Positions 4,135-53,260 of a DNA stretch of 64,000 nt are shown here, one piece after another. Location: assembly GCA_001179505.1 (NCBI GenBank), contig CDMY01000831.1:186001-250000 (forward strand). Reading direction: 5' to 3'. Every line of letters starts with the position of its first letter. Within the stretch, counting starts at the first letter, position 1. Source of the stretch: Vitrella brassicaformis CCMP3155 (taxonomy: Eukaryota > Protista > Chromerida). The position numbers and the translations under genes are program-made. Below the pieces are notes generated by a model. The model saw nothing but the letters and a program-made list of their open reading frames with translations. It ran no database searches and was not told the DNA's origin.

Positions 4135-7100
4135 CTAAATAGTGGGCCCCGACTGTCTGTAGTCGATGTCGCTTCTACAGATGGGGCACTGCGTGTTGCC
4201 CCGCCACGGCGCATACCTCTTGTGCCAGCAGGTGACATACAAACATCGGTGGCGGCAGGTGGACGGCGCCTTGCCGATGAGCACCACCGTCCGCTGCTCG
4301 GCCTGGCACACCGCACACAACTCGTCCTCCTCCCTGTCGTCGATGCGCCGCTGCAGCTGCCGATTCTCCTCTTGGTGCGCCCGAAGCATGAGCCCGTCGA
4401 GCTGCTGAATGCGGCCCATGACGCGGGCGAGGAAGGCCGTCGCCTCGGCCACCGTGTGGATGGACGAGAGGCAAGCCATTGAAGGCCTGCACAGAGAGAC
4501 AGACAGTGGACAGACAAACAGATAGACAGCCGATGTGTGTGTGTGTGTGATCGCACCTTTCCCGACTGTCCATCTTGATGGCATCGACACGCGACTGGAG
4601 CTTCCCCACGTCATGCGAGAGGCACCTCAGCCGACGATCCAGCTCACCGCTGCCCAGCTGCTGCTCGACCCTGAATGCCACACACAGACGGAGTCACACG
4701 CATGGCGGTGTGGGAATCCCCGCTGTCTCTTTGCTCACTCTGAGATGCGCTGCGTGAGTTGCGCAAGCTGTTCGTCGAGCCCCAAACCACCAATGCCATC
4801 ATCTACACCAGCACCAGACGAGCTGCCCCCCTCCGGCGGCCCACAGGGGCCACCCGCATCGGCCGAGGAAGACCCTGATGCCGCTGCTGCCCCCTCAGTG
4901 GCGGTGTCCTGCTCCCTCTCTCTGTGGCGCCACATGTGGCGCTTCCACTGCTGTCGATCCGCTGCTGAGCTGTTGGATCTTGGCGAGTGCGGCGTCGTAG
5001 ATGGGCTGCAGGGCGGCCTTCTCGGCCTCGGCCTCAGCGGAAAACTGCCGGATGCAACGCCGCCCGCACGAACCACCTCATGCAACTCGTCAACAGACCT
5101 AACACACATAACACACACGACACGAGGTGCATCAAGGTCCCCGCCCTCTGTGTGTGTGCGGTTGGTCTCACTTTGGTGCGTTGCGCATGGCGACTTCCTT
5201 CTCGTGTATCAATTTGGCCTTTCGCTGCTCCAGCGAGGCGATGGCCGCCAACTTGCCGTCCAACTCGTGACGCAGCCTGCACACCCATCCCAAGACACAC
5301 ACGTGCTGACTGCAGTGAGAGTGCCGCCCATTCATCGCTTTTCCGGCTCACTCCTGCAGTCTATCGACAGCCTGCTGCTTCTGCTCTAAGGCCATGGCGC
5401 GTGCAGGATCGACGCTGTGGGCATCATCGGCAGCCGCGGCCGCTTCCCGCCTTTGCCGCTCCGTCGGGTCGTGGCTGTGATGTCCACCGCCCTGCCCCGA
5501 GCCCCACTCAGACCAAGCAGCCTCCATGCCCCTCACCCAGTCAGAGTCATCAGAAGGACTGCTGGGCGGTGACGACAAGGTCACGGCGGTGGTGCCGCTG
5601 CTCAACTCGCCCACACGAGAGCATCCATCAGCGGCAGCCGTTGCTGCGCCTCCGCTCTCCGTCGACAACGACGAGTGCTGCTTGAGGGGTGGGGTCACCA
5701 GAGGGGGGGCGGCGGGGCGAGGGGGGCGATGCTGCTGGCGATAAGCCATCCCACCAGTCACAGCAGGGCCACGTGTGCCGTCAGATGTGCCGCCGGCGGT
5801 GCTTGGCAGCGGCTGTGATGACACCGTCTCCCCAGATGGACTCGCAAACACAGAGGAGATCGCTTGTCCAGCCTGCTGTCGCGAGGGCGCATCAGCTGAG
5901 CCCGACCCGGCCCTTCTGCCCTTCTTCTTTCGGCGTCTCGCTGTCTGAGTCCACTGGCCGCCATCGTCTGCCATCGCCTCCTCCCGCTGCTGCTGATGAT
6001 GGTCGACTGAGATGCCAAATCCACCGCCAGGCATGATGGTGTCGTTGCTGCTGCTGGGTGTGACAGGGGGAGCGGCACTCTCCTCCGTGGCTGCGTCAGA
6101 TGCTGATGCTGCCGGGGTTGGTTGATCAGCTACCGTGTCTTTGGTATTCTTCCCCGGCCGCTGTCCTGCCCCATCAGCAGTCAATGCGTTGTCCTCTGGC
6201 TGATGACGGTGCGGCCGGCACTTCTTGGCTGTCGTCTTGGCTTCTTCCTGAGCAATCAGCAAGGCCATGTTCTGGTCGGCCCGCCGCTCGTCCTGGAGCC
6301 ACTGCCGATGCTGCCGCGATGGATGGATGACAAAGCACCAAAGTACTGACAGGCCGAGAGCAACAAGGATTCCAGCTCCAACCCACGGCGCCCACGGAGA
6401 GGACAGCTGCAAGCAAAAGAGAAGGAGAGAAAAGAGAGGCAGTGAGGACGCCTTGACGGTGTCCTTGGATCCTGCGTACCATTTCTCCGGTTGTCGGCAG
6501 CCGATGAAGGCCCGTCGCGTGGATGGGCAGCCTGGCAAGGAGCTCCTTGGCTGCTCCACTGATATTTTCATCCGAGCTCCCGGTGAGGCCCTCAAACGAC
6601 TGCTGACATCCCGCCTGCAGTCACCAAAACAGATGATGTGCGCCACGCAAGTGACTCAGTGAGTGCACCCTGCACCCCACCGTGCTGGCGATGGTGTTCG
6701 CGACTCGCTGGCCCAAGACGACGCTGTCCCTGACCAATCAATAGACTACCGACAAATGACAACAACACATGCACCAATGACGTTCGTTGCGTACCGGAGT
6801 ATCTCTTCGAAGGCCAGGACCATGTTGAGCAATTTGCCGAGCGTTATCTTGTTTGACATTTCCGTGTCCGTCGTAAGCTTCCCATTGAGGGGCACGAAAT
6901 GAGTCCCATTGAGGGGCACGAAATGGGGACTCGAGAAGGACTCACATGCCCTCTCGACACACCCGTTGTCGATGGCATACCTTCGCTGCACAAACAAAAT
7001 GCACACAGAAACAGGTGTCTGATTTGTCTGATTCCCTCCTTCAGCACACCTGCAATCCATCTCCTTTGTGAAGCAGCAGCGAACACGTGAAAAAGATCAA

Positions 7101-8216
7101 GTCTGAGCTGTCCTCGGCTTCCCGACGGCGGGTTACAGCGCTGAGGGCGTTCGGCAGCAGACCAGCATCGACTATGCTCACAAGAGTGAGACGAGATCCT
7201 CTGCTCCGCGACACGGGGCCTGATGGAAATGTAAACACAAACAGGAGTAAGTCGACGGAATTGTCCTCGCTATCCACTCTCACCTGCACATATGGTTGCC
7301 ATCACCAACATGCTCAGCAACTCCGCGGCCTTGGCCCAAATCACGTCGTCCCATGACAAGAGAAAGAGTGACAGCTTTTCCACCACCCCATGCTCGATAA
7401 GCGCATCAGCAATGCCCGGCAGCATCACAATACACTCACCTGGTCCAGTCTGTCCGATGCTCGACCACATCATTGGGATGGTGCCGAGCATCGATATTGC
7501 GGCCCTCGTGACAGACGGATGGGTGTTGCCCAGCAGCTGCAGCAGGGGCACAATGGCTGCACTGGTCACTACGTCATCCACCCACGGCAGGTGGCCGAGG
7601 ACGGCCGTCAAGGGACCCACAATGTCCTCCATGTCACTGCCTGGCAGCTCCAAAGTGCGGCTGAGGGTCTCGTTAAGCGACGAAAGAGCACCACATCTGA
7701 ACAGATAGACAGACAGACAGACAGCCACACAGGTGGGTCTGTTCATCTGGCCGTTCGGCCCCGCACTCACCGGGCGAGGGCATCAGCAGCCTCAGTGCCG
7801 CTCTCTGCTATCCGCTGCAAGAGAGTCAAAGCCTCGACTTGCACTGAATGGTGGTCACAGTCGGCGGCGACGGCAAGGACGGCCGTCCCATACCGAACAG
7901 CAACTTTTGCAGCGACATCACCCGGCTGTGTGCTGTCTGCAATGTCCTCTCTGATGGCCCGCAAGACGCTGATCTGCAGGGCAGTGTCGTTGCTCTCCAG
8001 CTGCAATGCCAGGGGACTGGGCGCTGCCTCTTCCACGCCTATGTCGTCATCAAGGACACCCACAGCCTTCTCAAAATCACCACTTTCGTCAGCAAATGAG
8101 GGGTCCACATCGTCCCTGTTGTCAAAGTCACCCAGAGGCTCCTCAAACTCACCGTTGTGACTCCTGATGGCTGGCGGCAGGCAAGCGAGCGTGACGACGA
8201 GCACAGCCGCCAACAT
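4135..8216 (-). CDS. ARM-TM-RING receptor-like E3 ligase, copy 1 (signal peptide, importin-alpha-like ARM ectodomain, TM, coiled coil, C3HC4-type RING with Cys>Tyr change)
   Basis: Hand-spliced in frame: MLAAVLVVTLACLPPAIRS...LESNDTALQISVLRAIRE...QVEALTLLQRIAESGTEAADALAR | CGALSSLNETLSRTLELP...EHGVVEKLSLFLLS | SIVDAGLLPNAL | RYAIDNGCVERACE | AGCQQSFEGLTGSSDENISGATKELL...GEM | (phase-0 intron 6407-6479) LSSPWAPWVGAGILVALGLSVLWCFVI...QQAVDRLQE | LRHELDGKLAAIASLEQRK | ... | CAVC...CRHRCLYVTC...CPICRSDIDYRQSGPTI*. Confidence 0.85.
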
Positions 8217-8434
8217 CAGGCGGGCAGGACTTCCGTTTTTATTTCTGATGACGTTTGTCGCTTTATTTCATCACCGTGACGTCCCCGCACGCGAGCGAAC
8301 GTGCCGGTATCAATCGCAGCTCCCGTCCTCCGATGTCAAACAACGACATGTTTATAAACGGAGGGATGGATGGATGGATGGCCGGAGTGCGATTCATCTA
8401 CAGTGAGGAAGTCACAGAGAGGACAGCATTGCCC

Positions 8435-10014: not shown

Positions 10015-10446
10015 GGCGACAAGCGGCACGCCACTGCACTGCTGGGTCACCTTGCACAGATGCGACCCTCACCAACAGCCGAAATGAGCCAACACAGCAA
10101 CCACACCCCGACGAAGAGATCTGCTGAGCAAGATCAACTCAAAACCGACGTGATCTGCCCCTCCGCCCTCAGCGCAGCCCGTACCCTCCCTCCAACCGAA
10201 GGGAGCGGAGCGCAACTATGCTAGGGTGCTTCCTGTGAAACCGCTGTCCCCGGCGATCGAATTGGCTTCTCGCGCATTCCGTTCGCAGAGATCCCCCGCA
10301 CTCATCTACCCTTGTAGCCTTCGCTGCGTTTCCATCGCGTTTTGGCGCCTTCCGCCGCCACTGAAGGAATCGGTCCTCAGGCAGCGGCGTGTTGGCACCT
10401 GGAGCGTCCTGCTTTGTCCATCGTGAGTGGATCAGGAAGCCAACCG

Positions 10447-11389: not shown

Positions 11390-11420
<31 letters not shown>

Positions 11421-11766
11421 GGGTGCATCTGCCTGTCTTGGTACGAACACCATGCCGGTTGGTGTGTGTTTCTCCACTCAGGATGGTTCCCTGCCGTATG
11501 CCGAGTGCTTCATCTGCGGCAGCAAAGGACACCTCGCGTCGTCTTGCTCGCAGAACCTCATGGGTAGGTAGGAGGGCGGGCGGGGGACGACACACACACA
11601 CACACACACACGCACACCCGTGGCTGCCCGTGTGTGCCATTCAGGCGTCTACCCGAGGGGCGGCGGGTGCCATCTGTGCGGCTCCATCTATCACCTGCAG
11701 AAGGACTGTCCGCAGAAGGCAGCCACAGCGGGCAACAGACGGAGGGCGGCAAAGGGCGGTTTCTAG
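10447..11766 (+). CDS. Basic protein with four CCHC zinc knuckles (ZCCHC9-like)
   Basis: Lys/Arg-rich N-terminus, then spliced knuckles CFRCRQSGHRLQDC, CFNCGATDHTLKAC, CFICGSKGHLASSC and (YPRGGG)CHLCGSIYHLQKDC; TAG at 11764-11766. Confidence 0.85.
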
Positions 11767-13800: not shown

Positions 13801-13858
13801 GCAGACATGCCAGCCTTCCGGCCGCAGGGCCAGCTTTGGCGCACAAGTCGCTTGTATT

Positions 13859-17759: not shown

Positions 17760-17790
<31 letters not shown>

Positions 17791-28674: not shown

Positions 28675-28706
<32 letters not shown>

Positions 28707-29059: not shown

Positions 29060-32000
29060 AGACAACGCGATCGGTCTGGCGCTCTCCTCCAAATCTTGCT
29101 CCAAATCATGAGCCGGACGCCATCTCCCTTCCATCCGATGGTCTTGTCGACCAACGTGGCTACAGTGATTTCCCTCAGCTGATCCCGTGTGTTGTGATCG
29201 GGTCTCTTGATGCTGTCGGCCGTGCTCTTTGCGCTGGCCCTTACCGCCACCCCGAGCGGCTCATTTCCTGCGGCTGACTTTGACGAAGCGGACGATGGAT
29301 TCATTGATGAGGAGGAGGATGGCGCCGACGAGCCGGCCCGTGTGCTGGAGGTGACCATGTCCTCTGAGGGGGCGCTCAGTATGTTGCGGGCCATCAGAGA
29401 GAACATTGCAGACAGCACACAGCCGGAGGAGGAGGCTCCACAATACGGTGGAGATCTTACTCGTCTGCTACAGACGCCAAACTTGACAGCGAACGTGGAA
29501 CGGGAAGCGGTCGACCTGCCAGTGCATATCGTAAGAGTAGGTGATCGGGTTGACGAAGCTGTGCTGGCAACTTTCGTGCAGCTGCTGGACCGTCACGACG
29601 ATAGCGTCTTTAGAGCGGCGACCTCCATGCTGGCCGGGATTCCCATTGCTGCATCTGAAGGGTCCGTGGGGGAAATTCATCGGGTAGTGGCCGCTGTTCT
29701 ATTCGAGCAGCAGGCGGTGTCAAAGCTATCGCGCTTGCTTTTGTCGCCATACGGCCCTGCAAGCAGTGATGCCATGTATGTCGCCCTGCTCGCCCTACAT
29801 CAGATAGCACGTGAGTCGGATGCAGCTGCACAAAGGCACCTCACTTGTCTGTCACTTGCCTGTTTGTGTGCATCAGGCGAAATTCCCGAGACGATTGCCA
29901 TCAGTATGAGACAGATCATGGATCGTGACGTCGTTCCGAATTTGAGGACGGTTTACCAAAGCCAAAGCGGGACAAATAATGTGTCCACTAGCGGTGATAT
30001 GTCAACAACAATGGCCACCTTGCTATTGTCGTGTAGCCTTGCGCTGAGTTTCGGACGAAAACTGGACAACGAAATGGCGGTGAGCGTCGGTATCTCTATG
30101 TTTATCTCTCTGTCTGTCTGTCTGTCCGTCTGTGTGTGTGTGTGTCTGTCTGTCTGCCTGTCTGTGTTGTGCAGGTTCGCTATGCAGTCGAGCACGGGTG
30201 TTTCGACGCAGCATGCGATGTGGTCGAGCACAAAACGGTCAGGAAAACGGCGGCGTACTCCACCCTTGTGATGTCCTTAGAAGCGGAAGCACTGCTTGAA
30301 TTGAAGTTGCTATCAGGCGGGTACGTTACGCATGAAGCCTTTGTAATGGTCACGATCACGGTGTCATGTTTGCAATCCATCAGGGCAAGTGAGGCATTCA
30401 GGAGGCGAGTCGCCAAGATCATCATGGGCAGGGTCTGGAACGCTTCGCATGACGCGTGACCGAGCTCATCGCTTGTTTTGTGGCTTCAGAGCAGCTGCAA
30501 GCGTGCCATCGAGAAGCGCGCCAGCGGCTCCGGGGATGGTGCCAGAAAAGCCAAGGCCATCGCGAGTTGGGTGCGCATGTATGAGGTCACTGGACTGTAT
30601 CGGCTGCCAAGACGCGATGATCTGGTGCGACACAAGAGGACAAAGAGCACCTGAAAGTACTGTTTCTCTCTCTCCTTGGCAGGTGTCCTCTCCTTGGGCA
30701 CTCTCGGCCGCTGTTGCCCTCTTCGCTGTCCTGCTCGGCCTGTCAGCACTGTGGCGCTTTGTTGTCCGTCCGGGGCAACAGCGTCGGCAGCAGCGTCTGG
30801 CCGAGGACGCAGCGGCACGGCTGATAGCTGAGGAGGAAGCAAAGAGGAGCAGAGGGCAGGGGAGGGGCCGCAGAGGTCATGCCAGGCAGCCCAATGCTGC
30901 TTCTGCCGCCCGTCGGCCGACGGCTCAGCCATTCTTCGCTGCTGCTGCCCATGACAGTGGGATCGCGTCTGCCACCACCACGTCCACTAGCAGCCACAGT
31001 GGCTGCCTGACACCCACTGCGGCAGCAAGCAGCGGTGGCTTTCAGCCAGCCTCCGTGTCTGGGGGTGGATCAGCTGATCAGCAGCAGCAAGAGCATCAGG
31101 TGGAGGCGATGGCAGATAGTGGCGGCCAGTGGACTCAGACCGCAGCGCGACACCGAAAGAAAAAGGGCAGAAGGGCCGGGTCGGGCTCGGCGGCCGATGG
31201 GTCAGCTTCACAACAGCTGGCTGGACAAGCGAGCACCTCTGTGTCTGCGAGTCCATCTGGGGAGACGGCGCCCCCACAGCCGCTGCCAAGCACCGCCGGC
31301 AGCATCTCTGGCGGCACACGTGGCTATGCTGTGACTGGTGGGATGGCCCATCGCCCGCAGCGTCGCCCCTTTCGCCCCGGCGCCCCCCCTCTGGTGACCC
31401 CACCCCTCAAGCAGCACTCGTCGTCATCGACAGAGAGCAGAGGCGCAGCACCGGCTGCTGCTGATGGATGCTTTCGTGTTGGGGGTCACGAAGGCGCGGA
31501 TTTTGCGGGCGAGTTGAGCAGCGGCACCACCGCCGTGACATTGTCATCACCGCCCAGCAGTCCTTCTGATGACCCTGAGTGGGTGAGGGGCATGGAGGCT
31601 GCTTGGTCTGAGTGGGACACGGGGCGGGGTGACGGCCATCACAGCCACGACCCGCCGGAGCAGCAAAGGAGAGCAGAGGCCGCGGCTGCCGATGACGCCC
31701 ACAGCGTCGATCCCGCACGCGCCATGGCCTTAGAGCAGAAGCAGCAGGCCGTCGACAGACTGCAGGAGTGAGCCGGAAAGGCGATGAATGGGCGGCACTC
31801 TCACTGCAGAACCACGTGTGTGTCTTGGCATGGGTGTGCAGGCTGCGTTGTGAGTTGGACGGCAAGTTGGCGGCCATCGCCTCGTTCGAGCAGCGCAAAG
31901 CCAAACTGATACGCGACAAGGAAACCGCAATGCGCAACGCACCCAAGTGAGACGAACCGCACACACAGAGAGGGCGGGGACCTTGATGCACCTCGTGTCG

Positions 32001-33170
32001 TGTGTCTTATGTGTGTTAGGTCTGTTGACGAGTTGGATGAGGTGGTTCGTGCGGGCGGCGTTGAGGGCATCCGGCAGTTTTCCGCTGAGGTCGAGGCCGA
32101 GAAAGCCGCACTGCAGCCCATCTACGACGCCGCACTCGCCAAGATCCAACAGCTCAGCAGCGGATCGACAGCAGTGGAAGTGCCACACAGAGAGAGGGAG
32201 CAGGACACCGCCACTGAGGGGGCAGCAGCGGCATCGGGGTCTTCCTCGGCTGATGCGGGTGGCCTCTGTGGGCCGCTGGAGGGGGGCAGCTCGTCGGGTG
32301 CTCGTGTAGATGATGACATTGGTGGTTTGGGGCTTGACGAACAGCTGGCGATGCTCACGCAGCGCATCTCAGAGTGAGCACAGAGACAGCGGGGATTCCC
32401 ACACCGCCATGCGTGTGACTCCGTCTGTGTGTGTGTGGCATTCAGGGTCGAGCAGCAGCTGGGCAGCGGTGAGCTGGATCGTCGGCTGAGGTGCCTCTCG
32501 CATGAGGTGGGGAAGCTCCAGTCGCGTGTCGACGCCATCAAGATGGACACTCATAACAAGTATGAAACAAGTACACACACATCGGCTGTCTATCTGTTTG
32601 TCTGTCCACTGTCTGTCTCTGTGCAGGCATTCGATGGCTTGCCTCTCGTCCATCCACACGGTGGCCGAGGCGACGGCCTTCCTCGCCCGCGTCATGGGCC
32701 GCATTCAGCAGCTCGACGGGCTCGTCATTCGGGCGCACCAGGAGGAGAATCGGCAGCTGCAGCGGCGCATCGACGACAGGGAGGATGACGAGTCGTGTGC
32801 GGTGTGCCACGACGGGCGGCGGACGGTGGTGCTCATCGGCAAGGCGCCGTCCGGCTGCCGCCACCGATGTCTGTGTGTCACCTGCTGGCACAAGAGCTAT
32901 GCGCCGGGGCGGGGCAGCACACAGTGCCCCATCTGCAGAAGCGACATCGACTACAGACAGTCGGGGCCCACCATTTAGACGATTTGTGGGGTGTACAGCT
33001 GGTGGGTTCATGTTAGTCTGTCGGGTGGAGGAGAGCTGCTGTAAGGGCGTTGCAGAATGGGATGCAGCCCCATTCACTCGAGGCGATGCTGACTGCACGT
33101 GTGTGAGGGTGGGATGATTAGTGTATTTGTGTAGTTCATGACGCTGCATGATCTGTTCTCCTTTTCGGCT
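29060..33170. repeat. Inverted duplication; partner at about 49345-53410
   Basis: The upstream (acaacgcgatcg...aaatcatgagccgga.gcc...gtgatttccctcagctgatc), tail exons/introns and 3' flank (cgatttgtggggtgtacag...gcagccccattcactcgaggcgatgctgactgc) of copy 2 match the reverse complement around copy 5. Confidence 0.85.
29210..32978 (+). CDS. ARM-TM-RING receptor-like E3 ligase, copy 2 (apparently intact, canonical RING)
   Basis: MLSAVLFALALTATPSGSF signal, acidic linker, ARM exons (FVQLLDRHDDSVFRAATSML; QIMDRDVVPNL; VRYAVEHGCFDAACDVV; SSCKRAIEKR...VTGLYRLPRRDDL), then | VSSPWALSAAVALFAVLLGLSALWRFVV TM, coiled-coil exons and CAVC..CRHRCLCVTC..CPIC. All joins are GT-AG and in frame. Confidence 0.87.
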
Positions 33171-33220: not shown

Positions 33221-33470
33221 GCACGGTCCTTCTGAGGGCAATGGTGTCCTGTCTGTCACTTCCTCACTGTAGATGAATCGCACTCCGGCCATCCATCCAT
33301 CCATCCATCCATCCATCCGTTCTTGCCATGTCGTTGTTTGACATCTGAGGACGGGAGCTGCGATTGAGACTGGCACGTTCGACCGGTGTGCGGGACGTGA
33401 TGAAATAAAGCGACAAAAGCCATCAGAAATGAAAACAGAAGTCCTGCCTGCCTTGATGTTGGCGGCTGCG
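33221..33470. repeat. Inverted copy of 8200-8449 (UCP stop codon, UCP 3' flank and copy 1 upstream region)
   Basis: gcacggtccttctgagggca...cttcctcactgtagatgaatcgcactccggccatccatcc...gtgatgaaataaagcgacaaa..catcagaaat is the reverse complement of 8225-8449. Confidence 0.9.
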
Positions 33471-36400
33471 CTCGTCGTCACGCTGGCCTCCTTGTCGCCA
33501 GCCGTGAGCGGCGATCTTCATAGGGATGAGGTGCACGGTCTCATGAAGCAGCTGCGTGAGGTCATCGCCGACAGCACACGGCCGGACCACATTGCTGCAG
33601 GCGTTGCGGAGCGCTCCGGGGCGGCCGTCGGCGCTCTGCTGGGAGGAGCATTTGAGACGGCTCTGCAGCTGGAGGCATCAAGGCTGCTGACGTCAATCGG
33701 GAAGGCCGGCACCCAGGCCGTTGGGGCCCTCATACGGTAGTGTTGACACAGAGATATAAAGAGAGGCATTCTGGGTGTGTCTGTGTCAGGGTGGGTGTCA
33801 TCTCTTCTCTTGTGAGGGCCATCAAGCGTGCTGTAGACCTCCCAGACGAAGAGCTTGCCTCAGCCATCGTCATGCCCTTGCACCAGGTTGTGCTCGTGGC
33901 CGATGAGAATGGCTTACCGTGGAAGGATGAGCTGTTCGAGGCCGACGGGCTGCCTCCGCTCGTTCGGCTGCTGGACCACCAGCACGAGGAGGTCAAGAGA
34001 GCCGCAACCACCATCATCAGGAAGCTCCAATTCGCTCTGTGTGTGGCTCCAAGACCTGCGTGTGTTGATGTGGCCTACACCTTGTTCGAGCATGGGGCGC
34101 TCAAGAAGCTCTCGGCATTGCTGTTACGGCCCGATGTCGAGATGCGTCACAATGCCGTTGTCATTGTAGAACACATCTTGATGCCCATACTTGATGACCT
34201 TCGTAAGATGGAACACCCACACCAACCACTGCAGGGCACCACAACCCTCTCTTTGTTTGTGTATTTGTTTGTTTGGTCCAACTGTGTGTGATCGATATAT
34301 CAGCCGAGCGGCCTGGGCTGCAGCAAGCCGTGATTGAGACCATCATCGATTCTGAAGTGTTGCCCAAGCTGGCAGTCGCCGCATCAGGCAGCCATGTTGG
34401 CCGAGGAAGCCATGCAGCTGCCTACATCCTGCCGTATCATCGTGTGTGTAACCTGCTGATACACAGGGGGAATGACACCCAGGTGAGGTGGCAAGGAAAG
34501 AGACAACAGCTCTTCTTAATTTCTCTCAATCTTCCTCTGGATGTGTCTGTGTGTGCGTTGCGTTGGATGCAGCAAGTCTACGCAGCTGCTCACGGATGCA
34601 TTGAAAAGGCGTGTGTCTTCCTGACGGCGCGTGTCAAGCAGATGCAGGCGCCGTTGTCGGACTGGGATTACTTTGACACTCTCCTGGTCGACTCCTTGGG
34701 GGGTGCCCTCAGGTCCACTCCTTCGCCTTGGGACACCTTCTACCAGAATTCGCTCAGTGGCAGTTTGAGGCAGCGAGCCACAGCCGCCATCCTTACGACG
34801 GTCTCACTGCACTGACCACACGAGGGGCAAAACACCCGAATCGCACGGATCGTCTGTCGTCTTGTGTATCTACCTGTCTGCAGCATGGTTGTGGGCAGTC
34901 GATCAAGGAGCTCGTTGAGCACCCCACTGACGCCATCAGCATGAGAGCCAAAAGGGCCATGGAGCTATTGGAGGCAAACGTGGAGAGCATGGAGGACGAC
35001 AGTGACGACAGTGACGACAGTGGCGACAGTGACGGCACGGACACGGATTCCCTCCTTGACGAGTCGGACGTCAGTATCCTCGATGAACCTGAGGGCCCCG
35101 TTCAGTTCACCGGGCGGGCAGCGGCATCCATCAAGATGTTGACCCTGCAACTGAGGAGCGACGACAAGCAGCAGCTACTGGGTGCGTTGGTGGGAGTGGT
35201 TGAGGGCACTTTCCGAAGCGAGCGTGCGACCACCAAGCAGCTGCTGGTCGCACAGTATGCCGATCAGCTTGGGGAATCTGTCCTGCGTGTCTTGTGCGAG
35301 ACAGAGGACGATGACGTCCAGCGGGCAGCGGGCGAGGTCCTGGGCCTTTTTGCCGGGAGCGGCCCTCGGGTGGTCGATGTGTTCATCCGGTGAGTGAGTG
35401 AGTGAGTGAGTGAGTGCAGGGGGTGGGTACTGTACGCTGGGCGATCGATTGTGGGCTCGTCAATTGTCTCAGGTTTGGCGCGATCCCCTCTCTTGTCCAG
35501 GCTCTCAGACGCAGCACGGAGCTCTCAGGCAGACACGCAGCTGGTGCCCTCAGTCCCCTCAACATTTTACGCCCCCTGCAGCTCCTCTTGCGTGAGGCTG
35601 GTGCTCAGTCGACCAATCAGCTGATGGAGGCGGGCGGGCTGCCCCTCCTAGCCAAGCTGCTGGACCATAGTGACCTGACGGTGAAGGCAGCGGCCGTCCG
35701 CATTCTCGCAGTGACCCCGGGCGGCCACCGAGTCTTGTCAACCCGAATTATCGGCATCGCTATCATCCTTGCCGCCTTAGTCATGCTGCCGCGTTTGTGG
35801 CGCTTCCTCTACGTCCACCTTTTGCGGCTGCGGCAGCACCGACGGGAGCAGCAAGCCGAGCGGCACCAGAGAGACCTGCTGGCTGACGAAGAGGCGGAGA
35901 AGAACAGGGACAATGGCAGAGGCGGCAAGGGGCGACAACAGACCACCGTCCGCAGACGGCCCGTCGCTCAGCCTTCCTCTGGTAGTGATGACCAGGGTGG
36001 GCGGCTCTCCTGTACAACAGCCAGCAGCAGCGGCAGCAGCAGTGGCCGCCAGACACCCAGTGTGCTGCGAGAGGAATCGACCACCGTGGCTGAGATGGAG
36101 TCTGATGACGGCCAGTGGAAGGCGGTGACGCGCAATCGGTCGAACAGGACCAAGAGGGGCGGCAGCACTCAAGCGACTTCCTCTCACCAGACGCCAACCA
36201 GCGCAAGCAGTAGCCTGACGACGCCGTCCAGCAGCCCTGTGACGACGAACGGTGAGGGGCATCCGTCTGAAGGCGTCAGCAGTGCCACATCGTCGGCCGA
36301 TCAGACGCCGCGCGACACTCTGCCGATAAGCGTCAGCATACCAAAGAGGCGGCGGGCGGCCGGGAGGGGCCTGGGGCTGACAACCATCGCACCACCGCCG

Positions 36401-37185
36401 CCATCGATGGGTGCGGCCCCTCCGACTCCCTGGCTGCCGTCAGCAGAGGACATCAGCAGCTCGACGGCTCATCGGCCGCACCTTCCCCCGCCCCCGCCCC
36501 CGCCCCCCAGCCCTCCTGAGGTCTCGTGTGGTGCTGCCCTCAGCGATGTGTGGCCCTCATCGGGGAGTTCGGTGCGTGCTCAAGCTGGTCTGTCCCACAA
36601 CAGGGGCCCCCCGCCTCTCGTCAAGTGCGGCCATGGCCATGGCAGCCAGCTGCAAGCAACGGCCGAGTACGAACGCACACAGACACAGGAAGGACACCTT
36701 TTCATTTATTGTGTCGTTTCAGAGTGGGCCGATTTCGTGACGAGCAGCGCCAGACGAGTGACACGCCCCAGCAGCCCCACCGTCTCTCACCCTCGGCCAG
36801 CGCCAGCACCACCAGCACCACCAGCAGCAGTGCGGCGGCCCTCGAATTGCTCACCGAGGAGCCCAGGAGCCAAGACAGCACACCACAACAAGAGACAGCA
36901 GCGGAGCAGGCCATCAGAGACGGCACGTGTGTCGCCTGCCATGAGCCGGGTCCAACAGTGGTCTTTTTCCCCTGCAAGCAGCGGTGTCTGTGTGCCGCCT
37001 GCTGGGCCATCATGTCCCGCAACCACAAGCGGGCTAAAGGGGAGAGGGAGCGGCTGAGGGCTGAGGGAGTGCCGGACAAGGCGATGGATATGGCCGTGCA
37101 GATCGATGCGGAGCTCAAGTGCCCGGCGTGTCTCACCAAGGCCGACTATGCCACCGATCTGAAGGGCATCAAAGTTACCACATGA
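33429..37185 (+). CDS. ARM-TM-RING receptor-like E3 ligase, copy 3 (extended ectodomain, Pro-rich tail, split RING)
   Basis: MKTEVLPALMLAAALVVTLASLSPA signal; ARM exons (DGLPPLVRLLDHQHEEVKRAATTII; QAVIETIIDSEVLPKL; QVYAAAHGCIEKACVFL; HGCGQSIKELVEHPTDAISMRAKRAMELLE), acidic linker, second ARM unit, TM IIGIAIILAALVMLPRLWRFLYV. Intron 36667-36722 joins the tail in frame to CVAC..PCKQRCLCAAC..CPAC. Confidence 0.85.
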
Positions 37186-42872: not shown

Positions 42873-45800
42873 TCATTCGGGCTGCGATATGAAGGGATTT
42901 GAGACCCACTGCAAGGCCTCCGCCATTGTCCCGGCGAAATCCACCGCCTTGCTACACTGCTCGCACCGATATTCCGGCTCGTCCAGCAGCTCCAGCTGCT
43001 CCGCACCCTCACCCTGCGCCAGCACCACGTTAGCCCGTTTCCTATCGGCGTTCTCGGCCCTCACCCGGCCGAGTCTCCGCTGCCAGGCCTGTTTGCGGTT
43101 GGCATAGCAGGTGGTGCAGATGTGCATGTGTCTGCAGGGGATGTACATGACGGCCGCGGGGCCGTGCTCGCCGAAACAGACCAGACAGTCCACCATAGAC
43201 GCACTGCTGCTGGCAGCACCGGCGGCGGCAGGTGGGAGTGGGTGGAGTCCCTCATTGAAGCTGCTGGACGGCGGGCAGGCAGGAGACCTGACACAAGCAC
43301 CAGCGAAACAGTCAATCCGTCATCTCCGTGACGCCTCGATCCTCACCTGTCGGGGAATGTCACTGGCCGCCGAACGCCGCCACCACCACAAGACGCAAAC
43401 CTAAGTGAAGGAGACACGGCACAATGGTCGGCAATGAGATGGCCTCCCTCCCTGCCCAATGCTCTGTGTCCTCACCTGCCGCACTTGACGAGTGGCGGGG
43501 GGCCCCTGCGGGACGCACCATCATCAGCACGCACCGAACTTCCCGATGAGGGCCACTCATGGCTGAGGGCAGCACCACACGAGACCTCAGGAGGGCTGGG
43601 CGGAGGGGGCGGGGGCGGGGGAAGGGGCGGCCGATGAGCCGTCGAGCTGCTGATGTCCTCTGCTGACGGCAGCCAGGGAGTCGGAGGGGCCGCGCCCATC
43701 GATGGCGGCGGTGGTGCGATGGTTGGCAGCCCCAGGCCCCTCCCGGCCGCCCGCCCCCTCTTTGGTATGCTGACGCTCATCGGCAGAGTGTCGCGCGGCG
43801 TCTGGTCGGCCGTCGATGTGGCAGTGCTGAGGTCTCCAGAGGGATGCCCCTCACTGTCTCTCGTCGGAGAGCTGCTGGGCGGCGTCATGGGATGGCCATT
43901 GCTGAAGTCGTTTGGCGCCTGTTGTGGGGGCGCCGCCAAATGAGATGAGCTCGGTAGACCAGCCTCCGGTCGCAAAGCTGACCCACCAGTTCTGCCTGGC
44001 CGCCCGCCTTTTCTGCCCTTCTTCTTTCGGTGTCCCTCTGTGGTCTGGGTCCACTGGCCGCCACTGTCTGCCATCGCCTCCACCTGATGCTGATCAGCCG
44101 ATCCATCCCCAGACATGGTGGGTGGCTGGAGGTCACTGCTGCTAGTGGCCCTGGTGCTGGGTGTGGCAGTGGAGGCACTCTCACTGTCATCGTCAGCAGC
44201 AGCGGAGGATGGCTGAGCCGTCGGCCGGCGGGAAGCAGAAGCGTTGGGCTGCCTGGCATGGCCTCTCTGGCCCCTCCCCTGCCCTCTGCTCCTCTCTGCT
44301 TCCTCCTCAGCTATCAGCTGTGCCGCTGTGTCTTCGGCCTGACGCTGCTCACGGCTTTGGTTCCATCGGTCGATGTGGGGCTGGAGAAACCACCACAGCA
44401 CGGAGGCGACAGCCACAAGAAGGATTCCGCCCCCAATCCACGGCGCCCAAGGTGAGGACAGCTGCAAAGGAAGAGTGGTCGGCCTTGTAACGGTGCCTTT
44501 TGGGCCCTGCGTACCGTTTCCCCGGTTGTTGTTCGCCGACGCAGGTCCGCCGCGTAGACGGACAGCGTATTCGTAACAGCCTGTGCGGCGCTGCTGGCAA
44601 TGTTAGCATCAGGGCTCCTTGCAATGTATTCAATCGACTGCTGGCATCTCTGCAGTCACCAAAACAGACCGTGTGCGCCACGCAAGTGACTTAGTGAGTG
44701 CACATCGCATCCGACCATGCTGCCAACGATAGTCTTTGCGACTTCCTGCCCCAAAACGTCGCTGTCCCTGATCAATCAATGCACCACCAACAAACAGACA
44801 GGATGCCTCACCCTTGTGTGGATGGCGTTCGTTGCGTACCTGAGTATCTCTTTGAAGGCCAGGAGCAATGTTGTGATAAGGCCCTCTTCAATGCGCTCGT
44901 GTACAGGTAAGCCCCCCGATATCGGGGTCGAGATGAATGTACACGCCGCCTCGAGGCACCCGTTGTCGACGGCGTACCGACGCTGAACACACAGCAGTGC
45001 ACATCACAATGTACACCGCATGATTCCATTTATGGCATGGGCACATAGTCGAGAAGCGTACCTGTCCTTCGTCCCCCTCGAACAACAGAGAGCTGCACAC
45101 TGCATGCACTAAAGGCATGCAGTCGAGGCCTTTGAAAGCGTTGGGCAGGATGCGGTTTGTGACTATGGCCGTAGGACTGAGGCCAGACTTGCGCCCTACG
45201 ATGTAGTCTGGAGTAAAGTCCGCACACAAACACGCACAGAAGTGAATGACAAACAGCGCCACCTACCTTCGCATATGCGCGTCACCGCCATCGTGAATAA
45301 CAAGACGGCGGCGCGGTCCCGAGTCGAGTTGTCAGATGACAGAAGCAAGGCCGACAGCTTTTCCACACCCCCATGGTTGACAAGAGCATCAGCAAGACCT
45401 GGTGCTGTCACAGCACACGATCCGTCGGGCGATGTGTGGACCGGAATCCTGGCGAGCATCACCACTGCAGCATTCTTGACCGACGAGTGGCTGTGGTCCA
45501 GCAGCTGAAACAGGGGCAAAATGGTAGTAGCAGTCTCGGGCGGACCATAGATCCACGGCAAGTGCTTCAGGATGGCAGTCAGAGGCCTCACGATGTCCTC
45601 CATGTCGCTGTCTGGCAGCTCTAAAGTGCGGCTGAGGGTATCGACAAGCGACGAATGGGTGCCACCTCTGACAAACAGTCTGAAACAGACAGACAGACAG
45701 ACAGTCACACTCGTGCCAGCCGACCGGTGCCACCTCGACTCACCGAGCGAGGGCCTCAGCGGCCTCAGTGCCGGTCTCTGCCACCTGCTGCAAGACAGTC

Positions 45801-46600
45801 GCCGCCTCAACCTGCACTTCACGGTGGTCGAAGTCGCCGACGAGGCCAAGGATGGCCGGCCCAAACTGACCGACAATCTCGGCAGCAGCTTTCTCTGGGA
45901 ATTTGCTCTTCTTGACCACGGAGGGGATCCCCCGCAGCGTCCGTAGCTGCTCGTGCCTCTCATCACTGTTCAGCTCATTTATCAGTTTCTCCGCCGCCCT
46001 GTCTTGGACGGCGTTATAACGATCCCCCAGCCGGGCAAGCGCAGCCTCGTGCGCCTCATCCCCTCGGGGAAGGTGATGCAGGACGGTGCTCAAAGGTTCC
46101 GCAACGTCCATCATTCTGTCATCCGGCAAATCCGTTGCGTGAATGAGAGTCTCGATGACGGACGACCGAGCACCAACACTATACAGGACACCAGACACAG
46201 ACAGCAACACACATGGGTCCTGCCTGTCAACCAACGGACAAGCATCCGACCTCTCACCCACTCACCGGGCGAGGGCGTCAGCAGCCTCAGTGCCGGTCTC
46301 TGCCATCATGGCCAGCAGAGCCGCCGCCTCAACTTGGACTGCAGGGTGTCCAAAGTCGCCGGCGAGGGCAAGGAGAGCCTGACCATAGAGACCAGCGTAT
46401 CGTGCAGCATCCTCCTGCGGCCGTAAGCCCTCCCCGATGTCCTCAAAGAGGGACTGCAACACGTGGAGCTGCTTGAGGCTGTCGTTGCTCTCCAGCTCAC
46501 GCAGCAGGGGCAACTGTCGGCCTTCGCACGTTTCCGCAGAGGAAGCGATGAGCACGGCGAGCACCAGAGAGGAGCCGCAACAGGAGAAGCCGAAGGGCAT
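42873..46600 (-). CDS. ARM-TM-RING receptor-like E3 ligase, copy 4 (duplicated first ARM unit, Pro-rich tail, split RING with all 8 ligands)
   Basis: MPFGFSCCGSSLVLAVLIASSA signal-like; two LxSxxxxxQL...QVEAA.LL...AETGTEAA.ALAR units; TLSRTLELPDSDMEDIVRPL exon; RYAVDNGCLEAAC; RCQQSIEYIARSPDANIASSAAQAV...GET | LSSPWAPWIGGGILLVAVASVLWWFL; two small introns join in frame to CLVC..PCRHMHICTTC..CEQC. Confidence 0.85.
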
Positions 46601-49503: not shown

Positions 49504-52500
49504 CTAAATGGTGGGCCCCGACTTTCTGTAGTCGATGTCGCTTCTGCAGATGGGGCACTGCGTGTTGCCCCTCCCCGGCGCATAGCTCGTGTGCCAGCAG
49601 GTGACACACAAACATCGGTGGCGGCAGGTGGACGGCGCCTTGCCGATGAGCACCACCGTCCGCTGCCCGTCGTGGCACACGGCACACGACTCGTCGTCCT
49701 CCCTGTCGTCGATGCGCCGCTGCAGCTGCCGATTCTCCTCCTGGTGCGCCCGAAGCATGAGCCCGTCGAGCTGTGAATGCGGGCCATGACGCGGGCGAGG
49801 AAGGCCGTCGCCTCGGCCACCGTGTGGATGGACGAGAGGCAAGCCATCGAAGGCCTGCACAGAGAGACAAACAGATAGACAGCCGATGTGTGTGCCCTTG
49901 TTTCATACCTGTTATGGGTGTCCATCCTGATGGCATCGACACGCGACTGGAGCTTCCCCACCTCATGCGAGAGGCACCTCAGCCGACGATCCAGCTCACC
50001 GCTGCCCAGCTGCTGCTCGACCCTGAATGCCACACACAGACAGTCACACACATATGGCGGTGTGGGAATCCCCGCTGTCTCTGTGCTCACTCTGAGATGC
50101 GCTGTGTGAGTTTCGCCAGCTGCTCGCCGAGCCCCAAACCACCAATGTCATCAGCTACACCAGCACCCGACGAGCTGCCCTCCAGCGGCCCACAGAGGCC
50201 ACCCGCATCAGCCGAGGAAGACCCCGATGCCGCTGCTGCCCCCTCAGTGGCGGTGTCCTGCTCCCTCTCCATGTGGGGCTCTTCCACTGCTGCCGATCCG
50301 CTGCTGAGCTGCCGGATCTTGGCGAGTGCGGCGTCGTAGATGGGCTGCAGGGCGGCCTTCTCGGCCTCGGCCTCAGCGGAAAACTGCCGGATGCCCTCAA
50401 CGCCGCCCGCACGAACCACCTCATCCAACTCGTCAACAGACCTGAAACACATAACACACACGACACGAGGCGCGTCAAGGTCTCCGCCCTCTGTGTCTGT
50501 GTGTGTGGGTGCGGTTCGTCACACTTGGGTGCGTTGACCATTGCGGTTTCCTTCTCGCGTATCAGTTTGGTCTTTCGCTGCTCCAGCGAGGCGATGGCCG
50601 CCAACTTGCCGTCCAACTCACAACGCAGCCTGCACACACATGCCAAGACACACACGTGCTGACTGCAGTGCGAGTGCCGCCCATTCATCGCTTTTTCGGC
50701 TCACTCCTGCAGTCTGTCGACAGCCTGCTGCTTCTGCTCTAAGGCCATGGCGCGTGCGGGATCGACGCTGTGGGCATCATCGGCAGCCGCGGCCTCTGCT
50801 CTCCTTTGCCGCTCCGTCGGGTCTTGGCTGTGATGTCCACCGCCCTGCCCTGAGCCCCACTGAGACCAAGCAGCCCCCACACCCCTGACCCACGCAGAGT
50901 CATCAGAAGGACCGCTGGACGACGACGACCGGCCCGCGAAGCTCTGGCCTCGTTGAGCGCCGACAAAGGCATTACCATGAGCGGCAGCCGGTGCTACGCC
51001 GGCTCTCTCCGGCGCCTGCTGCCGGTCGGCATAAGGCGACGAGTGATGCTCAGGCGATGGGCTCACTAGAGGAGGGACGAGGGGGCGAGGGGGGCTCTTC
51101 CTCATGGCGGTGCTTGGCGCCTGCTGTCGCGGCGCCGTCTCCCGAGATGAGCTCGATTGACCAGCATCCTGTCGTGAAGTCGCTTGAGTGGTCCCGCCTT
51201 TTCTGCTCTTCTTCTTCCTGTGTCGCGCGGCGGCTGTCCATTCGCCGCCGTCGTCTGGCGTCGGCTCCTCTTGATGCTCCTCCTGCTGCAGAGGATGAGC
51301 CGATCCATCGCCAGACGAGGTGGGTGTCAGGCAGCCACTGTGGCTGCCGCTTGATGCCGCAGTGGAGGCCATCCCACCGTCATCGCCAGCAGAAGAGGAT
51401 GGCTGGTCAGCGGGCCGGCGGGCAGCAGAAGCAGCATTGGGATGCCTGGCATGACCTCTGCGGCCCCTCCCCTGCCCCCTGTTCCTCACTGTTTCCTCCT
51501 CAGCTATCAGCTGTGTCGCTGTGTCTTCGGCCTGGCGCTGCTGCCGACGCTGCCAGTGACGCTGCAGCCAGGGACCGACAACAAAGCGCCACAGTGCCGA
51601 CAGGCCGAGCAGGACAGCGAGAGTACCTGCGACCCAGGGCGCCCAAGGAGAGGAAAGCTGCAAAGGCAAAGGCTATTGGGAAAGACAGAAGGAGAAAGTT
51701 TTCTGTCTGTTGTTTCTTGTGTCGTACGAGATCAATGCTTCTTGGCAGCCGATACAAGTCAGTGACCTGCCAGACACACAGGGACACGCCAGACACACCA
51801 TGCAGATCCACGCAGCTGTGCATACTACTATATCGTCATCGGCGTAGGCCCAAGGAGATCTGATCGCCAAACAATCGCTCGTTTTGGCTCGCTTTGGATC
51901 ACGGCCGCACGCGAATTCTTCGGTCAGTTCTTGGATGGCTCGCTTACAGCTGCTCTGAAGCCACAAAGGTGCAAAAAATGACACCGGTTAGGCGGCATCG
52001 TCTCAAGTGTGTCAGACCCTCATCTGAGACGAGATTCTCATCCTCAAGGCCGCACTTGCTCTGATTGATTGACAGGAGAGCATGGTCAGTTAACACGCAA
52101 GACATCCGCTGGCTCTCTCGCACCTGACAAATAAATTGGACAATACTGCCAGAGTATTCTTGACGTCCATGCGATCCTTGCTGGACTCCAGCAGGTCGCA
52201 TGCTACGCCGACACAGCCTTGGTCGACTGCATAGCTGACCTGCAACACACATACGAGACACACATGCATGAACACAGAATAGTGTGATCTACTCGCCCCG
52301 CCCCGCTCACCGCCGATTCATTTCCCCACTTCCATGGCAATAAACACGACGTAAAAGATAAACACGACATAAAAGGAATATATTCGGTAAGCGCCTTCTT
52401 GTGGCTTCCGGGTCCACAAGCCGTGATCGAATTCGGGATGACCTCAGCTTGGATCGTTTGCGCCATGCACGTGGGAATCGTCTGGGGGCGCGTGTCTGCC

Positions 52501-53260
52501 ACACATATTCGTGCATTGCAAGCAAGTGACAGACAGACAGACAGACAAACAGATGGCTTCAAGAGGTGCCTACCTTTCTACAGCCATTCGACTCACGTGC
52601 AGTCTGATGTAGGGCGGTCAGCGCGACGAATGTTGCATTCACGGCATAACTGCACATAAGGTGGTCGTTCGAAAGAAGTAAGGGCGACAGCTTCGACACC
52701 GCTCCATACTCGAAGAACACATCTGCCAGACCAGGCGGCGTCACGTGTGCAACCCCCCCTTGAACAAGTCCGTATGCGGTGGGAGTCCTGCTCAGGATTA
52801 ATGCCGCCGCTCTCACGACACGCTCATCGTTATGATCCAGCAGCTGCACGAAGGCCGTTGTAAGTAGGTGTATCCCCTCCTCGGTGAACGCCTCGGTGGC
52901 CCGAGCGCCGACTCGTGCCACCTGCACCAGCAGTTCGACTGCTTCGCGCGTGACGTGGCTGTCCTGAGTCTGTCCCAACAGATGGACGATGGTCCGCAAC
53001 GGATCAACATATCGCATAGCCTCCTCCGGGTGAACGCTCTCCGCTATATCCTCTGTGATGGCCCACAAGACTCTCAACTGCTGGGCAGTGTCATGGCTCT
53101 CCAGTGACATGGTCACTCGCCTCGAACAAATATTGGGCCGCCTCGTCGGCGCCATCGTCGTCATCGTCAATGAATCCATCTCCTCGTCGAAGTCAGCCGC
53201 AGGAAATGAGCCGGTCGGGGTGGCGATAAGGGCCAGCGCAAAGAGCAGGGCCGACAGCAT
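49504..53260 (-). CDS. ARM-TM-RING receptor-like protein, copy 5 (1-nt deletion puts the RING out of frame: RING-less variant, pseudogene or assembly error)
   Basis: MLSALLFALALIATPTGSF signal; ARM exons including VSYAVDQGCVGVACDLLESSKDRMDVKNTLAVLSNLF; TM LSSPWAPWVAGTLAVLLGLSALWRFVV; coiled-coil exons. Near 49773 the sense strand reads cgcattcacagctc versus cgcattcagcagctc in copies 1 and 2. Confidence 0.82.

What the first reader, a model, noticed from the sequence alone, without database searches (positions are those of the whole stretch)
4135..53260. Five-member family of receptor-like E3 ligases: signal peptide - importin-alpha-like ARM ectodomain - TM - disordered tail - RING
Seen: five loci splice via GT-AG introns into an N-terminal hydrophobic leader, ARM repeats, one TM helix followed by basic residues (LSSPW...LW.F...R/Q), a disordered tail and a C-terminal RING. 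The ARM-to-TM join is a shared phase-0 intron in copies 1, 2, 4 and 5 and is continuous within one exon in copy 3. Established: single-pass ectodomain-TM-RING ligases (PA-TM-RING such as RNF43/ZNRF3/GRAIL and plant RMR) use an ectodomain to select substrates, and importin-alpha ARM domains are normally cytosolic/nuclear. Inference: this is a receptor-ligase system with a karyopherin-derived lumenal/extracellular sensor, possibly for pathogen or partner recognition or surface-protein turnover. I do not know of this architecture being described, but could not check.
Basis: partly seen in the sequence, partly recalled or inferred. Interest (0 to 1): 0.93.

Follow-up and report, generated by a model that had tools for sequence, protein, structure and literature searches.

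The report
ARM-ectodomain membrane RING ligase family
The coral-associated alga Vitrella brassicaformis has a private, fast-changing gene cluster whose products look like single-pass membrane proteins with a helical ARM-repeat domain on the non-cytosolic side and a ubiquitin-ligase RING finger on the cytosolic side. This layout is unusual and is predicted from sequence only; its job is unknown.

Summary
The window is Vitrella brassicaformis CCMP3155 (contig CDMY01000831.1). All five loci are real paralogues and are already in GenBank/UniProt as unnamed "RING-type domain-containing proteins" of 934-1129 aa.

Each has an N-terminal signal-peptide-like leader, an ARM-repeat solenoid, one TM helix with positive-inside flanks, a 400-640 aa disordered tail and a C-terminal C3HC4 RING. 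RNA contigs confirm 3 of 9 introns of copy 2. The intron claims (phase 0 in copies 1, 2, 4 and 5; one exon in copy 3) are correct.

- The ARM domain is generic. It has no IBB domain and no WxxxN ladder, so "karyopherin-derived" is not supported.
- The family has at least 9 members on three contigs and was found only in Vitrella.
- It is a recombining mosaic with dN/dS of 0.5-0.76.
- Only copies 2 and 4 are fully intact. The others carry RING-ligand substitutions, frameshifts or a stop in the cytosolic half.

Best reading: lineage-specific type I "receptor-like" RING E3s, analogous to but not homologous with PA-TM-RING ligases. Topology and activity are untested. No paper found describes the layout. 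This scan's first readers had already noted the same family on other Vitrella DNA. Interest is moderate.

The parts
4135..8216 (-). Copy 1 (P0012, 1129 aa). Its ectodomain is closest to copy 4 and its cytosolic part is the coiled-coil type.
   Evidence: Public model equals my hand-built model. An RNA contig runs into its specific 3' flank.
8160..8216 (-). Copy 1 signal-peptide-like leader
6326..6391 (-). Copy 1 TM helix
4924..5055 (-). Copy 1: a 44-codon stretch read out of frame relative to copies 2 and 5. It is flanked by two compensating indels, and the conserved coiled-coil peptide sits in another frame.
4177..4317 (-). Copy 1 RING with the fifth ligand changed from Cys to Tyr
29210..32978 (+). 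Copy 2 (P0011, 1047 aa, 10 exons), fully intact. Leader 29210-29263, TM 30698-30766, basic motif 31121-31174, RING 32796-32936.
   Evidence: RNA joints at three introns. Ectodomain model is an ARM solenoid, pLDDT 70.
33429..37185 (+). Copy 3 (P0010, 1096 aa, 7 exons). Leader 33429-33512. Two ARM blocks are split by an acidic linker. ARM and TM lie in one exon (35473-36666) with the TM at 35747-35815. The RING at 36928-37131 has the His ligand replaced by Gln.
42873..46600 (-). Copy 4 (P0002, 1037 aa, 10 exons), fully intact. Leader 46600-46520, an internal duplication of the first ARM exon, TM 44446-44384, and a RING at 43187-42954 with an insert of about 45 aa between ligands 6 and 7.
49507..53260 (-). 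Copy 5 (P0003, 934 aa model). Leader 53260-53207, TM 51642-51577, RING 49686-49546. There is a 1-nt frame change near 49773, and the public model skips conserved ectodomain exons.

Best explanation
These are members of a Vitrella-specific, tandemly clustered family of type I membrane RING E3 ubiquitin ligases.

Proposed mechanism:
- A short cleavable leader sends the N-terminal ARM solenoid across the ER membrane, so it ends up lumenal or extracellular.
- One TM helix anchors the protein.
- A long disordered cytosolic tail carries one conserved acidic-Trp-basic motif (GGQWT...RHRKKKGRR) about 95-147 residues from the membrane.
- The tail ends in a C-terminal C3HC4 RING. In one subtype the RING follows a coiled coil and is RNF4-like. 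In the other it has a long insert.

Inferred function: the ARM surface binds a partner on the non-cytosolic side. The RING probably acts as a dimer and ubiquitinates the protein itself or neighbouring membrane proteins to control their turnover. This is how PA-TM-RING ligases (RNF43/ZNRF3, GRAIL, RMR) work.

The family evolves by birth and death with frequent exchange of modules. At present only copies 2 and 4 look catalytically competent.

Shown: gene structure, domain content, paralogy, mosaicism, lesions, and partial transcription and splicing. Inferred: topology, ligase activity, binding role.
For: Architecture:
- Public models and exact exon maps.
- Pfam Arm (up to E 4e-16) and zf-C3HC4_3 at 34 bits against a 27-bit cut-off in copies 2 and 5.
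- The ectodomain profile hits ARM proteins in the PDB, E 6e-19 to 1e-9.
- AF2 models are all-helical solenoids, pLDDT 74.8 and 70, matching ARM structures.

Topology:
- 7 of 8 full-length family members (five in the window, three on other contigs) start with a 12-18 residue hydrophobic run followed by small residues at -1/-3.
- There is one 21-23 residue TM, with more K/R after it than before it.

One gene rather than two:
- ARM and TM share one exon in copy 3.
- The TM-to-coiled-coil exon is one long ORF in most members.
- Intron positions are conserved.

Expression: spliced RNA contigs for copy 2 and a contig specific to copy 1.

RING type: the copy 2 RING aligns to the dimeric RNF4 RING, E 4e-4.

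Selection: dN/dS is below 1 in every domain, 0.29-0.76.

Concept: receptor-like ubiquitin ligases are an established class (bioRxiv 10.1101/2020.05.25.113944; PMC10686798).
Against: - No experiment and no dedicated predictor (SignalP, DeepTMHMM) was available. Topology rests on hydropathy and charge rules.
- ARM repeats are normally cytosolic or nuclear.
- The ectodomains carry only 0-2 N-glycosylation sequons, none conserved, and just three conserved Cys. There is therefore no positive signature of an extracytosolic domain.
- Only 2 of those 8 full-length members are fully intact. The others have lost RING ligands (copies 1 and 3), frameshifts (copies 1 and 5, P0001), a stop codon (the P0006 gene) or no clear leader (P0009).
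- dN/dS of 0.5-0.76 indicates weak constraint.
- RNA depth is low and does not span the ARM-TM junction or the tail.
- The RING of copies 3 and 4 and their relatives scores below Pfam's cut-off, 20-23 bits against 27.
Confidence: 0.5

Rival explanations
1. A decaying lineage-specific expansion. The architecture is real, but the family is mostly drifting. Most copies are pseudogenes or RING-dead remnants, and there is no coherent receptor function.
For: - There are five truncating or frame-changing lesions and two RING-ligand substitutions across 8 genes.
- dN/dS is 0.5-0.76 everywhere.
- In the ectodomain half, exons of copies 2 and 5 are no more conserved than introns: 54-72% against 64-75%.
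- RNA depth is low.
Against: - Ectodomain plus TM reading frames stay open in all members mapped or rebuilt (copy 5's ectodomain was not fully reconstructed).
- All truncating lesions found lie in the cytosolic half.
- Copies 2 and 4 are intact over more than 1000 codons.
- dN/dS stays below 1.
- Some lesions could be assembly errors.
- Copies 2 and 1 are transcribed and copy 2 is spliced.
Confidence: 0.2
2. Same topology but an internal compartment. The proteins sit in the ER or nuclear envelope, and the lumenal solenoid selects substrates, like Hrd3/SEL1L fused to its RING partner. Alternatively, the NLS-like basic motif on a long unfolded linker sends them to the inner nuclear membrane, as in yeast Heh1/Heh2.
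For: - The only conserved tail element is a basic cluster fitting K-K/R-x-K/R, placed 95-147 disordered residues from the TM.
- Lumenal alpha-solenoids partnered with RING ligases are known (Hrd3-Hrd1; established knowledge).
- Ubiquitin-pathway genes lie nearby: a PUB-domain gene and a UCH37-like gene.
Against: - No Sel1 or other ERAD-family hit.
- No retention signal was seen.
- Gene neighbourhood means little in eukaryotes.
- The motif is degenerate in copy 3 and P0001.
Confidence: 0.15
3. Different topology. One possibility is that the leader is not a signal peptide, or acts as a reverse anchor, so that ARM is cytosolic. The other is that the mid-protein helix does not span the membrane, so the whole protein is secreted, for example as an effector-like E3.
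For: - ARM and RING domains are normally on the same (cytosolic) side.
- ARM plus E3 combinations such as plant U-box-ARM proteins are the nearest look-alikes by language-model features.
- P0009 lacks a good leader.
- An SP+ARM-only relative with no TM or RING found by similarity lies next to the cluster.
Against: - The leader's h-region is 12-18 residues and sits at the very N-terminus in 7 of 8 members.
- The internal helix is 21-23 hydrophobic residues with Trp and basic flanks, and is the best conserved segment.
- A lumenal RING would have no E1, E2 or ubiquitin.
Confidence: 0.1
4. Targeting to the complex plastid or periplastid compartment through a bipartite leader. In copies 2 and 5 the residue after the predicted cleavage site is Phe, as in red-lineage plastid presequences.
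For: Phe follows the predicted cleavage site in copies 2 and 5. The periplastid compartment of red-derived plastids has its own ubiquitin machinery (established knowledge).
Against: The 25-30 residues after the leader are strongly acidic in copies 2 and 5 and mixed in the others, unlike transit peptides. The other subtypes lack the Phe.
Confidence: 0.03

Closest known systems
PA-TM-RING ligases (RNF43/ZNRF3, RNF13, GRAIL/RNF128, plant RMR)
   Same: Signal peptide, binding ectodomain, a single TM and a cytosolic RING in one chain, following the receptor-like E3 logic.
   Different: The ectodomain is an ARM solenoid, not a protease-associated domain. The RING is C3HC4 at the extreme C-terminus, 400-640 residues from the membrane, rather than a RING-H2 close to the TM. 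There is no sequence homology.
MEGF8/Attractin-MGRN1 receptor-like ligase complexes
   Same: A large non-cytosolic domain is coupled across one TM to a RING E3 acting on membrane proteins (bioRxiv 10.1101/2020.05.25.113944).
   Different: There the RING is a separate, recruited protein. Here it is fused. The ectodomains are unrelated.
Plant U-box-ARM (PUB) ligases and other ARM-plus-E3 proteins
   Same: An ARM repeat module is combined with an E2-binding RING/U-box fold. These are the top look-alikes by language-model features.
   Different: PUBs are soluble and cytosolic, carry a U-box N-terminal to the ARM repeats, and have no leader or TM.
Importin-alpha
   Same: An ARM superhelix. It is the best natural sequence match in the PDB, E about 1e-9.
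   Different: The family has no IBB domain, no WxxxN NLS-binding ladder and a predicted non-cytosolic location. Other ARM proteins match equally well by fold.
RNF4-type / IAP-type C-terminal RING (Pfam zf-C3HC4_3)
   Same: Copies 2 and 5 pass Pfam's cut-off, and copy 2 aligns to the RNF4 RING including its loop insertion. The RING sits at the C-terminal end, as in dimerising RINGs.
   Different: There are no SIMs or BIR domains. It is attached to a membrane protein. The other subtype has an insert of about 45 aa and scores below the cut-off.
Hrd3/SEL1L-Hrd1 ERAD module
   Same: A type I protein with a lumenal alpha-solenoid works together with a membrane RING ligase.
   Different: That module uses Sel1 repeats rather than ARM repeats, and it consists of two proteins with a multi-pass RING ligase. 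No homology was detected.

Membership tests
PA-TM-RING | Protease-associated (PA) ectodomain | tested here: not met
   Pfam scan of seven members finds Arm/HEAT and no PA domain.
PA-TM-RING | Signal peptide plus a single TM | tested here: met
   Hydropathy and charge analysis. This is prediction only.
PA-TM-RING | RING-H2 (C3H2C3) shortly after the TM | tested here: not met
   The RING is C3HC4 (zf-C3HC4_3) at the C-terminus, 400-640 aa after the TM.
Importin-alpha | N-terminal IBB domain | tested here: not met
   No IBB hit. The N-terminus is a hydrophobic leader.
Importin-alpha | Tandem ARM repeats forming a superhelix | tested here: met
   Pfam Arm hits, PDB profile hits, AF2 models and Foldseek matches.
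Importin-alpha | WxxxN ladder of the NLS-binding groove | tested here: not met
   No such motif in ARM helices. Each ectodomain has only 1-6 Trp.
RING E3 (zf-C3HC4_3) | Eight correctly spaced Zn ligands | tested here: met
   Met in copies 2, 4 and 5. Not met in copy 1 (Cys to Tyr) or copy 3 (His to Gln).
RING E3 (zf-C3HC4_3) | Score above Pfam's gathering threshold | tested here: inconclusive
   Copies 2 and 5 score 34 bits against a 27-bit cut-off. Copies 3 and 4, P0001 and P0009 score 20-23 bits.
RING E3 (zf-C3HC4_3) | E2-dependent ubiquitin transfer | not testable with these tools
   Needs an in vitro assay.
Plant U-box-ARM (PUB) | U-box domain N-terminal to the ARM repeats, soluble protein | tested here: not met
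   No U-box hit. The RING is C-terminal, and a leader and TM are present.
Hrd3/SEL1L-like ERAD adaptor | Sel1-like repeats in the lumenal domain | tested here: not met
   No Sel1 hits.

The most novel reading that the evidence does not exclude
Vitrella uses a normally cytosolic ARM solenoid as an extracytosolic recognition module in a diversifying receptor family.

Tandem gene pairs encode one coiled-coil/RNF4-like subtype followed by one insert-RING subtype. Such a pair is seen at copies 2-3 and on contig CDMY01000552.1, where the two pairs are collinear; copies 5-4 have the same order and orientation. These pairs could form heteromeric RING receptors with an active and a degenerate partner, as in MDM2-MDMX.

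Module shuffling would generate new specificities, giving an innate recognition or surface-remodelling system in a coral-associated relative of apicomplexans.
Probability: 0.1. Interest if true: 0.8.

Novelty: new variant of a known kind. Interest (0 to 1): 0.5.

Why it matters
If the predicted topology is right, this would be a rare case of ARM repeats working outside the cytosol. It would also be a new ectodomain class for receptor-like ubiquitin ligases, arising independently of animal and plant PA-TM-RING proteins in the closest photosynthetic relatives of apicomplexan parasites.

It would show that coupling an outside binding domain to an inside RING is a recurrent solution. It would also offer a compact, naturally shuffled set of variants for studying how such receptors evolve.

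If the topology is wrong or the family is mostly dead, it is only a lineage-specific curiosity.

Tried and rejected
- A word-indexed protein search with the 547-aa ORF of copy 3 found nothing. Its length filter excluded the full-length proteins. The exhaustive HMMER search solved this.
- Relatives outside Vitrella were sought three ways, and none belonged to the family. The exhaustive phmmer search gave only generic ARM hits such as Pleodorina Vac8. Two word-indexed searches found only Vitrella. A metagenome-contig scan gave 599 pattern matches, none confirmed.
- ESM Atlas look-alikes all scored below 0.85 and were generic ARM or U-box-ARM proteins, so they are leads only.
- The B-type RING gave no PDB sequence match.
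- The plastid-targeting reading was rejected because the post-leader sequence is acidic.
- I could not reconstruct the annotated copy 5 model with canonical junctions.
- I could not check disulfide geometry of the three conserved Cys, because model coordinates are not exposed.
- Paper searches found no description of the family. The Vitrella genome paper does not mention armadillo, RING or importin.
Full report
**Identity of the window**

An exhaustive HMMER search with the ARM-TM part of copy 3 returned only eight proteins from 1.84 billion. The family-specific hits are all from Vitrella brassicaformis CCMP3155. Two of them, CEM34799.1 and CEM34801.1, lie on the 253-kb contig CDMY01000831.1. 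The window is positions 186001-250000 of that contig. GC content is about 58-60%.

**The observation**

Stop-to-stop ORF self-comparison shows five paralogous loci on both strands, with E-values down to 1e-75. All five have public gene models:
- copy 1 = P0012, 1129 aa
- copy 2 = P0011, 1047 aa
- copy 3 = P0010, 1096 aa
- copy 4 = P0002, 1037 aa
- copy 5 = P0003, 934 aa

. I mapped copies 2, 3 and 4 base by base. They have 7-10 exons and every intron is GT-AG, 53-101 nt long. My independent hand model of copy 1 reproduces the public junctions.

The ARM-to-TM boundary is a phase-0 intron in copies 1, 2, 4 and 5. In copy 3 it lies inside exon 35473-36666.

Pfam finds Arm repeats (up to E 4e-16) and zf-C3HC4_3. 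Hydropathy shows an N-terminal hydrophobic run of 12-18 residues followed by small residues. It also shows one 21-23 residue helix, with 3-4 Lys/Arg in the next 15 residues against 1-2 before it.

**RNA evidence**

One run that behaves as RNA (X1) contains spliced contigs with GT..AG joints at 29810/29877, 32373/32446 and 32559/32627. These are exactly three of copy 2's nine annotated introns, and three genomic runs lack them. Another X1 contig runs from the shared RING end into copy 1's specific 3' flank. Copies 2 and 1 are therefore transcribed and copy 2 is spliced. Depth is low, and nothing covers the ARM-TM junction or the tail exon.

The single-gene reading rests on three points:
- Copy 3 has ARM and TM in one exon.
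- The TM-to-coiled-coil exon is one open frame of about 330-400 codons in most members. By my estimate the chance of this is of the order of 1e-5 per copy at this GC content.
- Intron positions are conserved.

**The ectodomain**

A profile of seven ectodomains hits designed consensus ARM proteins (E 6e-19) and then importin-alpha (E about 1e-9) in the PDB.

AlphaFold models are all-helical solenoids. Copy 3 reaches pLDDT 74.8 and shows two ARM blocks split by a disordered acidic linker. Copy 2 reaches pLDDT 70. Foldseek matches designed ARM proteins, importin-alpha, beta-catenin/plakoglobin, ODAD2, ARMC3, ARMC8 and SPAG6 at similar levels.

There is no IBB domain and no WxxxN ladder. The domain is a generic ARM solenoid, not demonstrably karyopherin-derived. 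Conserved positions are mostly core residues plus three Cys. N-glycosylation sequons are few and not conserved.

**The cytosolic part**

Two subtypes exist.
- Copies 1, 2 and 5 and the P0006 gene have a coiled coil followed by a compact RING. The copy 2 RING aligns to the dimeric RNF4 RING (E 4e-4).
- Copies 3 and 4, P0001 and P0009 have a proline-rich tail and a RING with an insert of about 45 aa. They score below Pfam's cut-off.

The only conserved tail element is an acidic-Trp-basic motif with an NLS-like KKKGRR core, 95-147 residues after the TM.

**Family size and dynamics**

Further members:
- P0006 plus an adjacent 339-aa RING gene, and P0001, on contig CDMY01000552.1.
- P0009 on CDMY01000309.1.
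- An 808-aa leader-plus-ARM gene, in which similarity searches found no TM or RING, just outside the window and downstream of copy 1.

No relative was found outside Vitrella.

The copy 2-copy 3 pair is collinear with the P0006-P0001 pair at 68-78% nucleotide identity. Elsewhere, blocks are exchanged among copies:
- Copy 2's 3' half is 89-90% identical to copies 1 and 5.
- Copy 3's tail is 91.5% identical to copy 4's.
- Copy 3's 5' end is 85.5% identical to copy 1's.

. This confirms a mosaic, gene-converting family.

dN/dS is 0.5-0.76 over the main domains, and 0.29 in the short acidic linker.

Lesions cluster in the cytosolic half:
- Copy 1 has two compensating frameshifts (4924-5055) and a Cys-to-Tyr RING ligand.
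- Copy 3 has His-to-Gln in the RING.
- Copy 5 has a 1-nt frame change at about 49773.
- The P0006 gene is split by an in-frame TAG.
- The P0001 RING is frameshifted.
- P0009 lacks a convincing leader.

Only copies 2 and 4 are fully intact. Some lesions could be assembly errors, which I could not check.

**Interpretation**

The best-supported reading is a lineage-specific family of type I membrane RING E3s with an extracytosolic ARM binding module. It is functionally analogous to PA-TM-RING ligases and to MEGF8-MGRN1 "receptor-like ubiquitin ligases" (bioRxiv 10.1101/2020.05.25.113944; PMC10686798). It is not a member of either, because the defining PA domain and the membrane-proximal RING-H2 are absent.

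Rivals:
- A largely decaying expansion.
- An ER or inner-nuclear-membrane role, suggested by the NLS-like motif on a long linker.
- An alternative topology.
- Plastid targeting, which is unlikely because the post-leader sequence is acidic.

A review of human TM RING proteins never mentions armadillo repeats (PMC4021871). The Vitrella genome paper does not mention the family.

**Earlier notes of this scan**

Earlier notes on this genome report the mosaicism, the loss of importin-alpha hallmarks and the greater divergence of the ectodomain. I tested these here and agree. Other notes list further ectodomain-TM-RING genes in Vitrella, with ankyrin, PAN/Apple and integrin-like ectodomains. I did not test those and treat them only as leads.

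**Verdict**

The architecture is unusual and, as far as I could find, undescribed. Topology and function are predictions, the karyopherin origin is unsupported, and most copies are damaged. Interest is moderate, and the finding is a new variant of the receptor-like RING ligase kind.

Noticed in passing
L005:19505-22907 (about 1.3-4.7 kb before the window start, same strand as copy 1): An 808-aa annotated gene with a signal-peptide-like leader and an ARM ectodomain 43-56% identical to copy 3/P0001. Similarity searches found no TM or RING in it. It may be a soluble, ectodomain-only relative, making at least six family genes on this contig.
   Followed up: partly
L001:1643-9430 (contig CDMY01000552.1): A second tandem pair collinear with copies 2-3. 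The first gene is split by an in-frame TAG into a 629-aa product and a 339-aa RING product. The second gene (P0001) has a frameshift between RING ligands 6 and 7. A Skp1_POZ gene follows at 10436-13878.
   Followed up: yes
window 26682-28924 (-), 60783-62940 (-), 54223-59916 (-): Neighbouring annotated genes carry a PUB (p97-binding) domain, a UCH37-like deubiquitinase (Peptidase_C12 plus UCH_C) and a 1323-aa DUF900 protein. There are ubiquitin-pathway genes beside the cluster, but the significance is unknown.
   Followed up: no
window 15089-17924 and 23877-25366: Another internally repeated ORF family, 45-80% identical pieces on both strands, with no Pfam hit. An annotated 319-aa gene lies at about 23940-25083.
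   Followed up: partly
window 31121-31174, 36107-36160, 44009-44062, 51199-51249, 5912-5962: The only conserved element of the disordered tails is an acidic-Trp-basic motif with an NLS-like KKKGRR core, 95-147 residues after the TM. It resembles the NLS-plus-long-linker signal used by yeast inner-nuclear-membrane proteins.
   Followed up: partly
window 32426 and introns of copies 2-5: Introns carry (TGTC)n/(CA)n-type microsatellites. Genomic runs show a 4-nt length variant at 32426.
   Followed up: no
window 45743-46600: Copy 4 has an internal tandem duplication of its first ARM exon. Both copies end in the same short motif, which lengthens the ectodomain.
   Followed up: partly
window 8435-9993 (-): A mitochondrial carrier (Mito_carr) gene lies directly upstream of copy 1. 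About 280 nt spanning copy 1's 5' flank and first codons (8169-8449) is 85.5% identical to the matching stretch of copy 3 (33221-33503).
   Followed up: no
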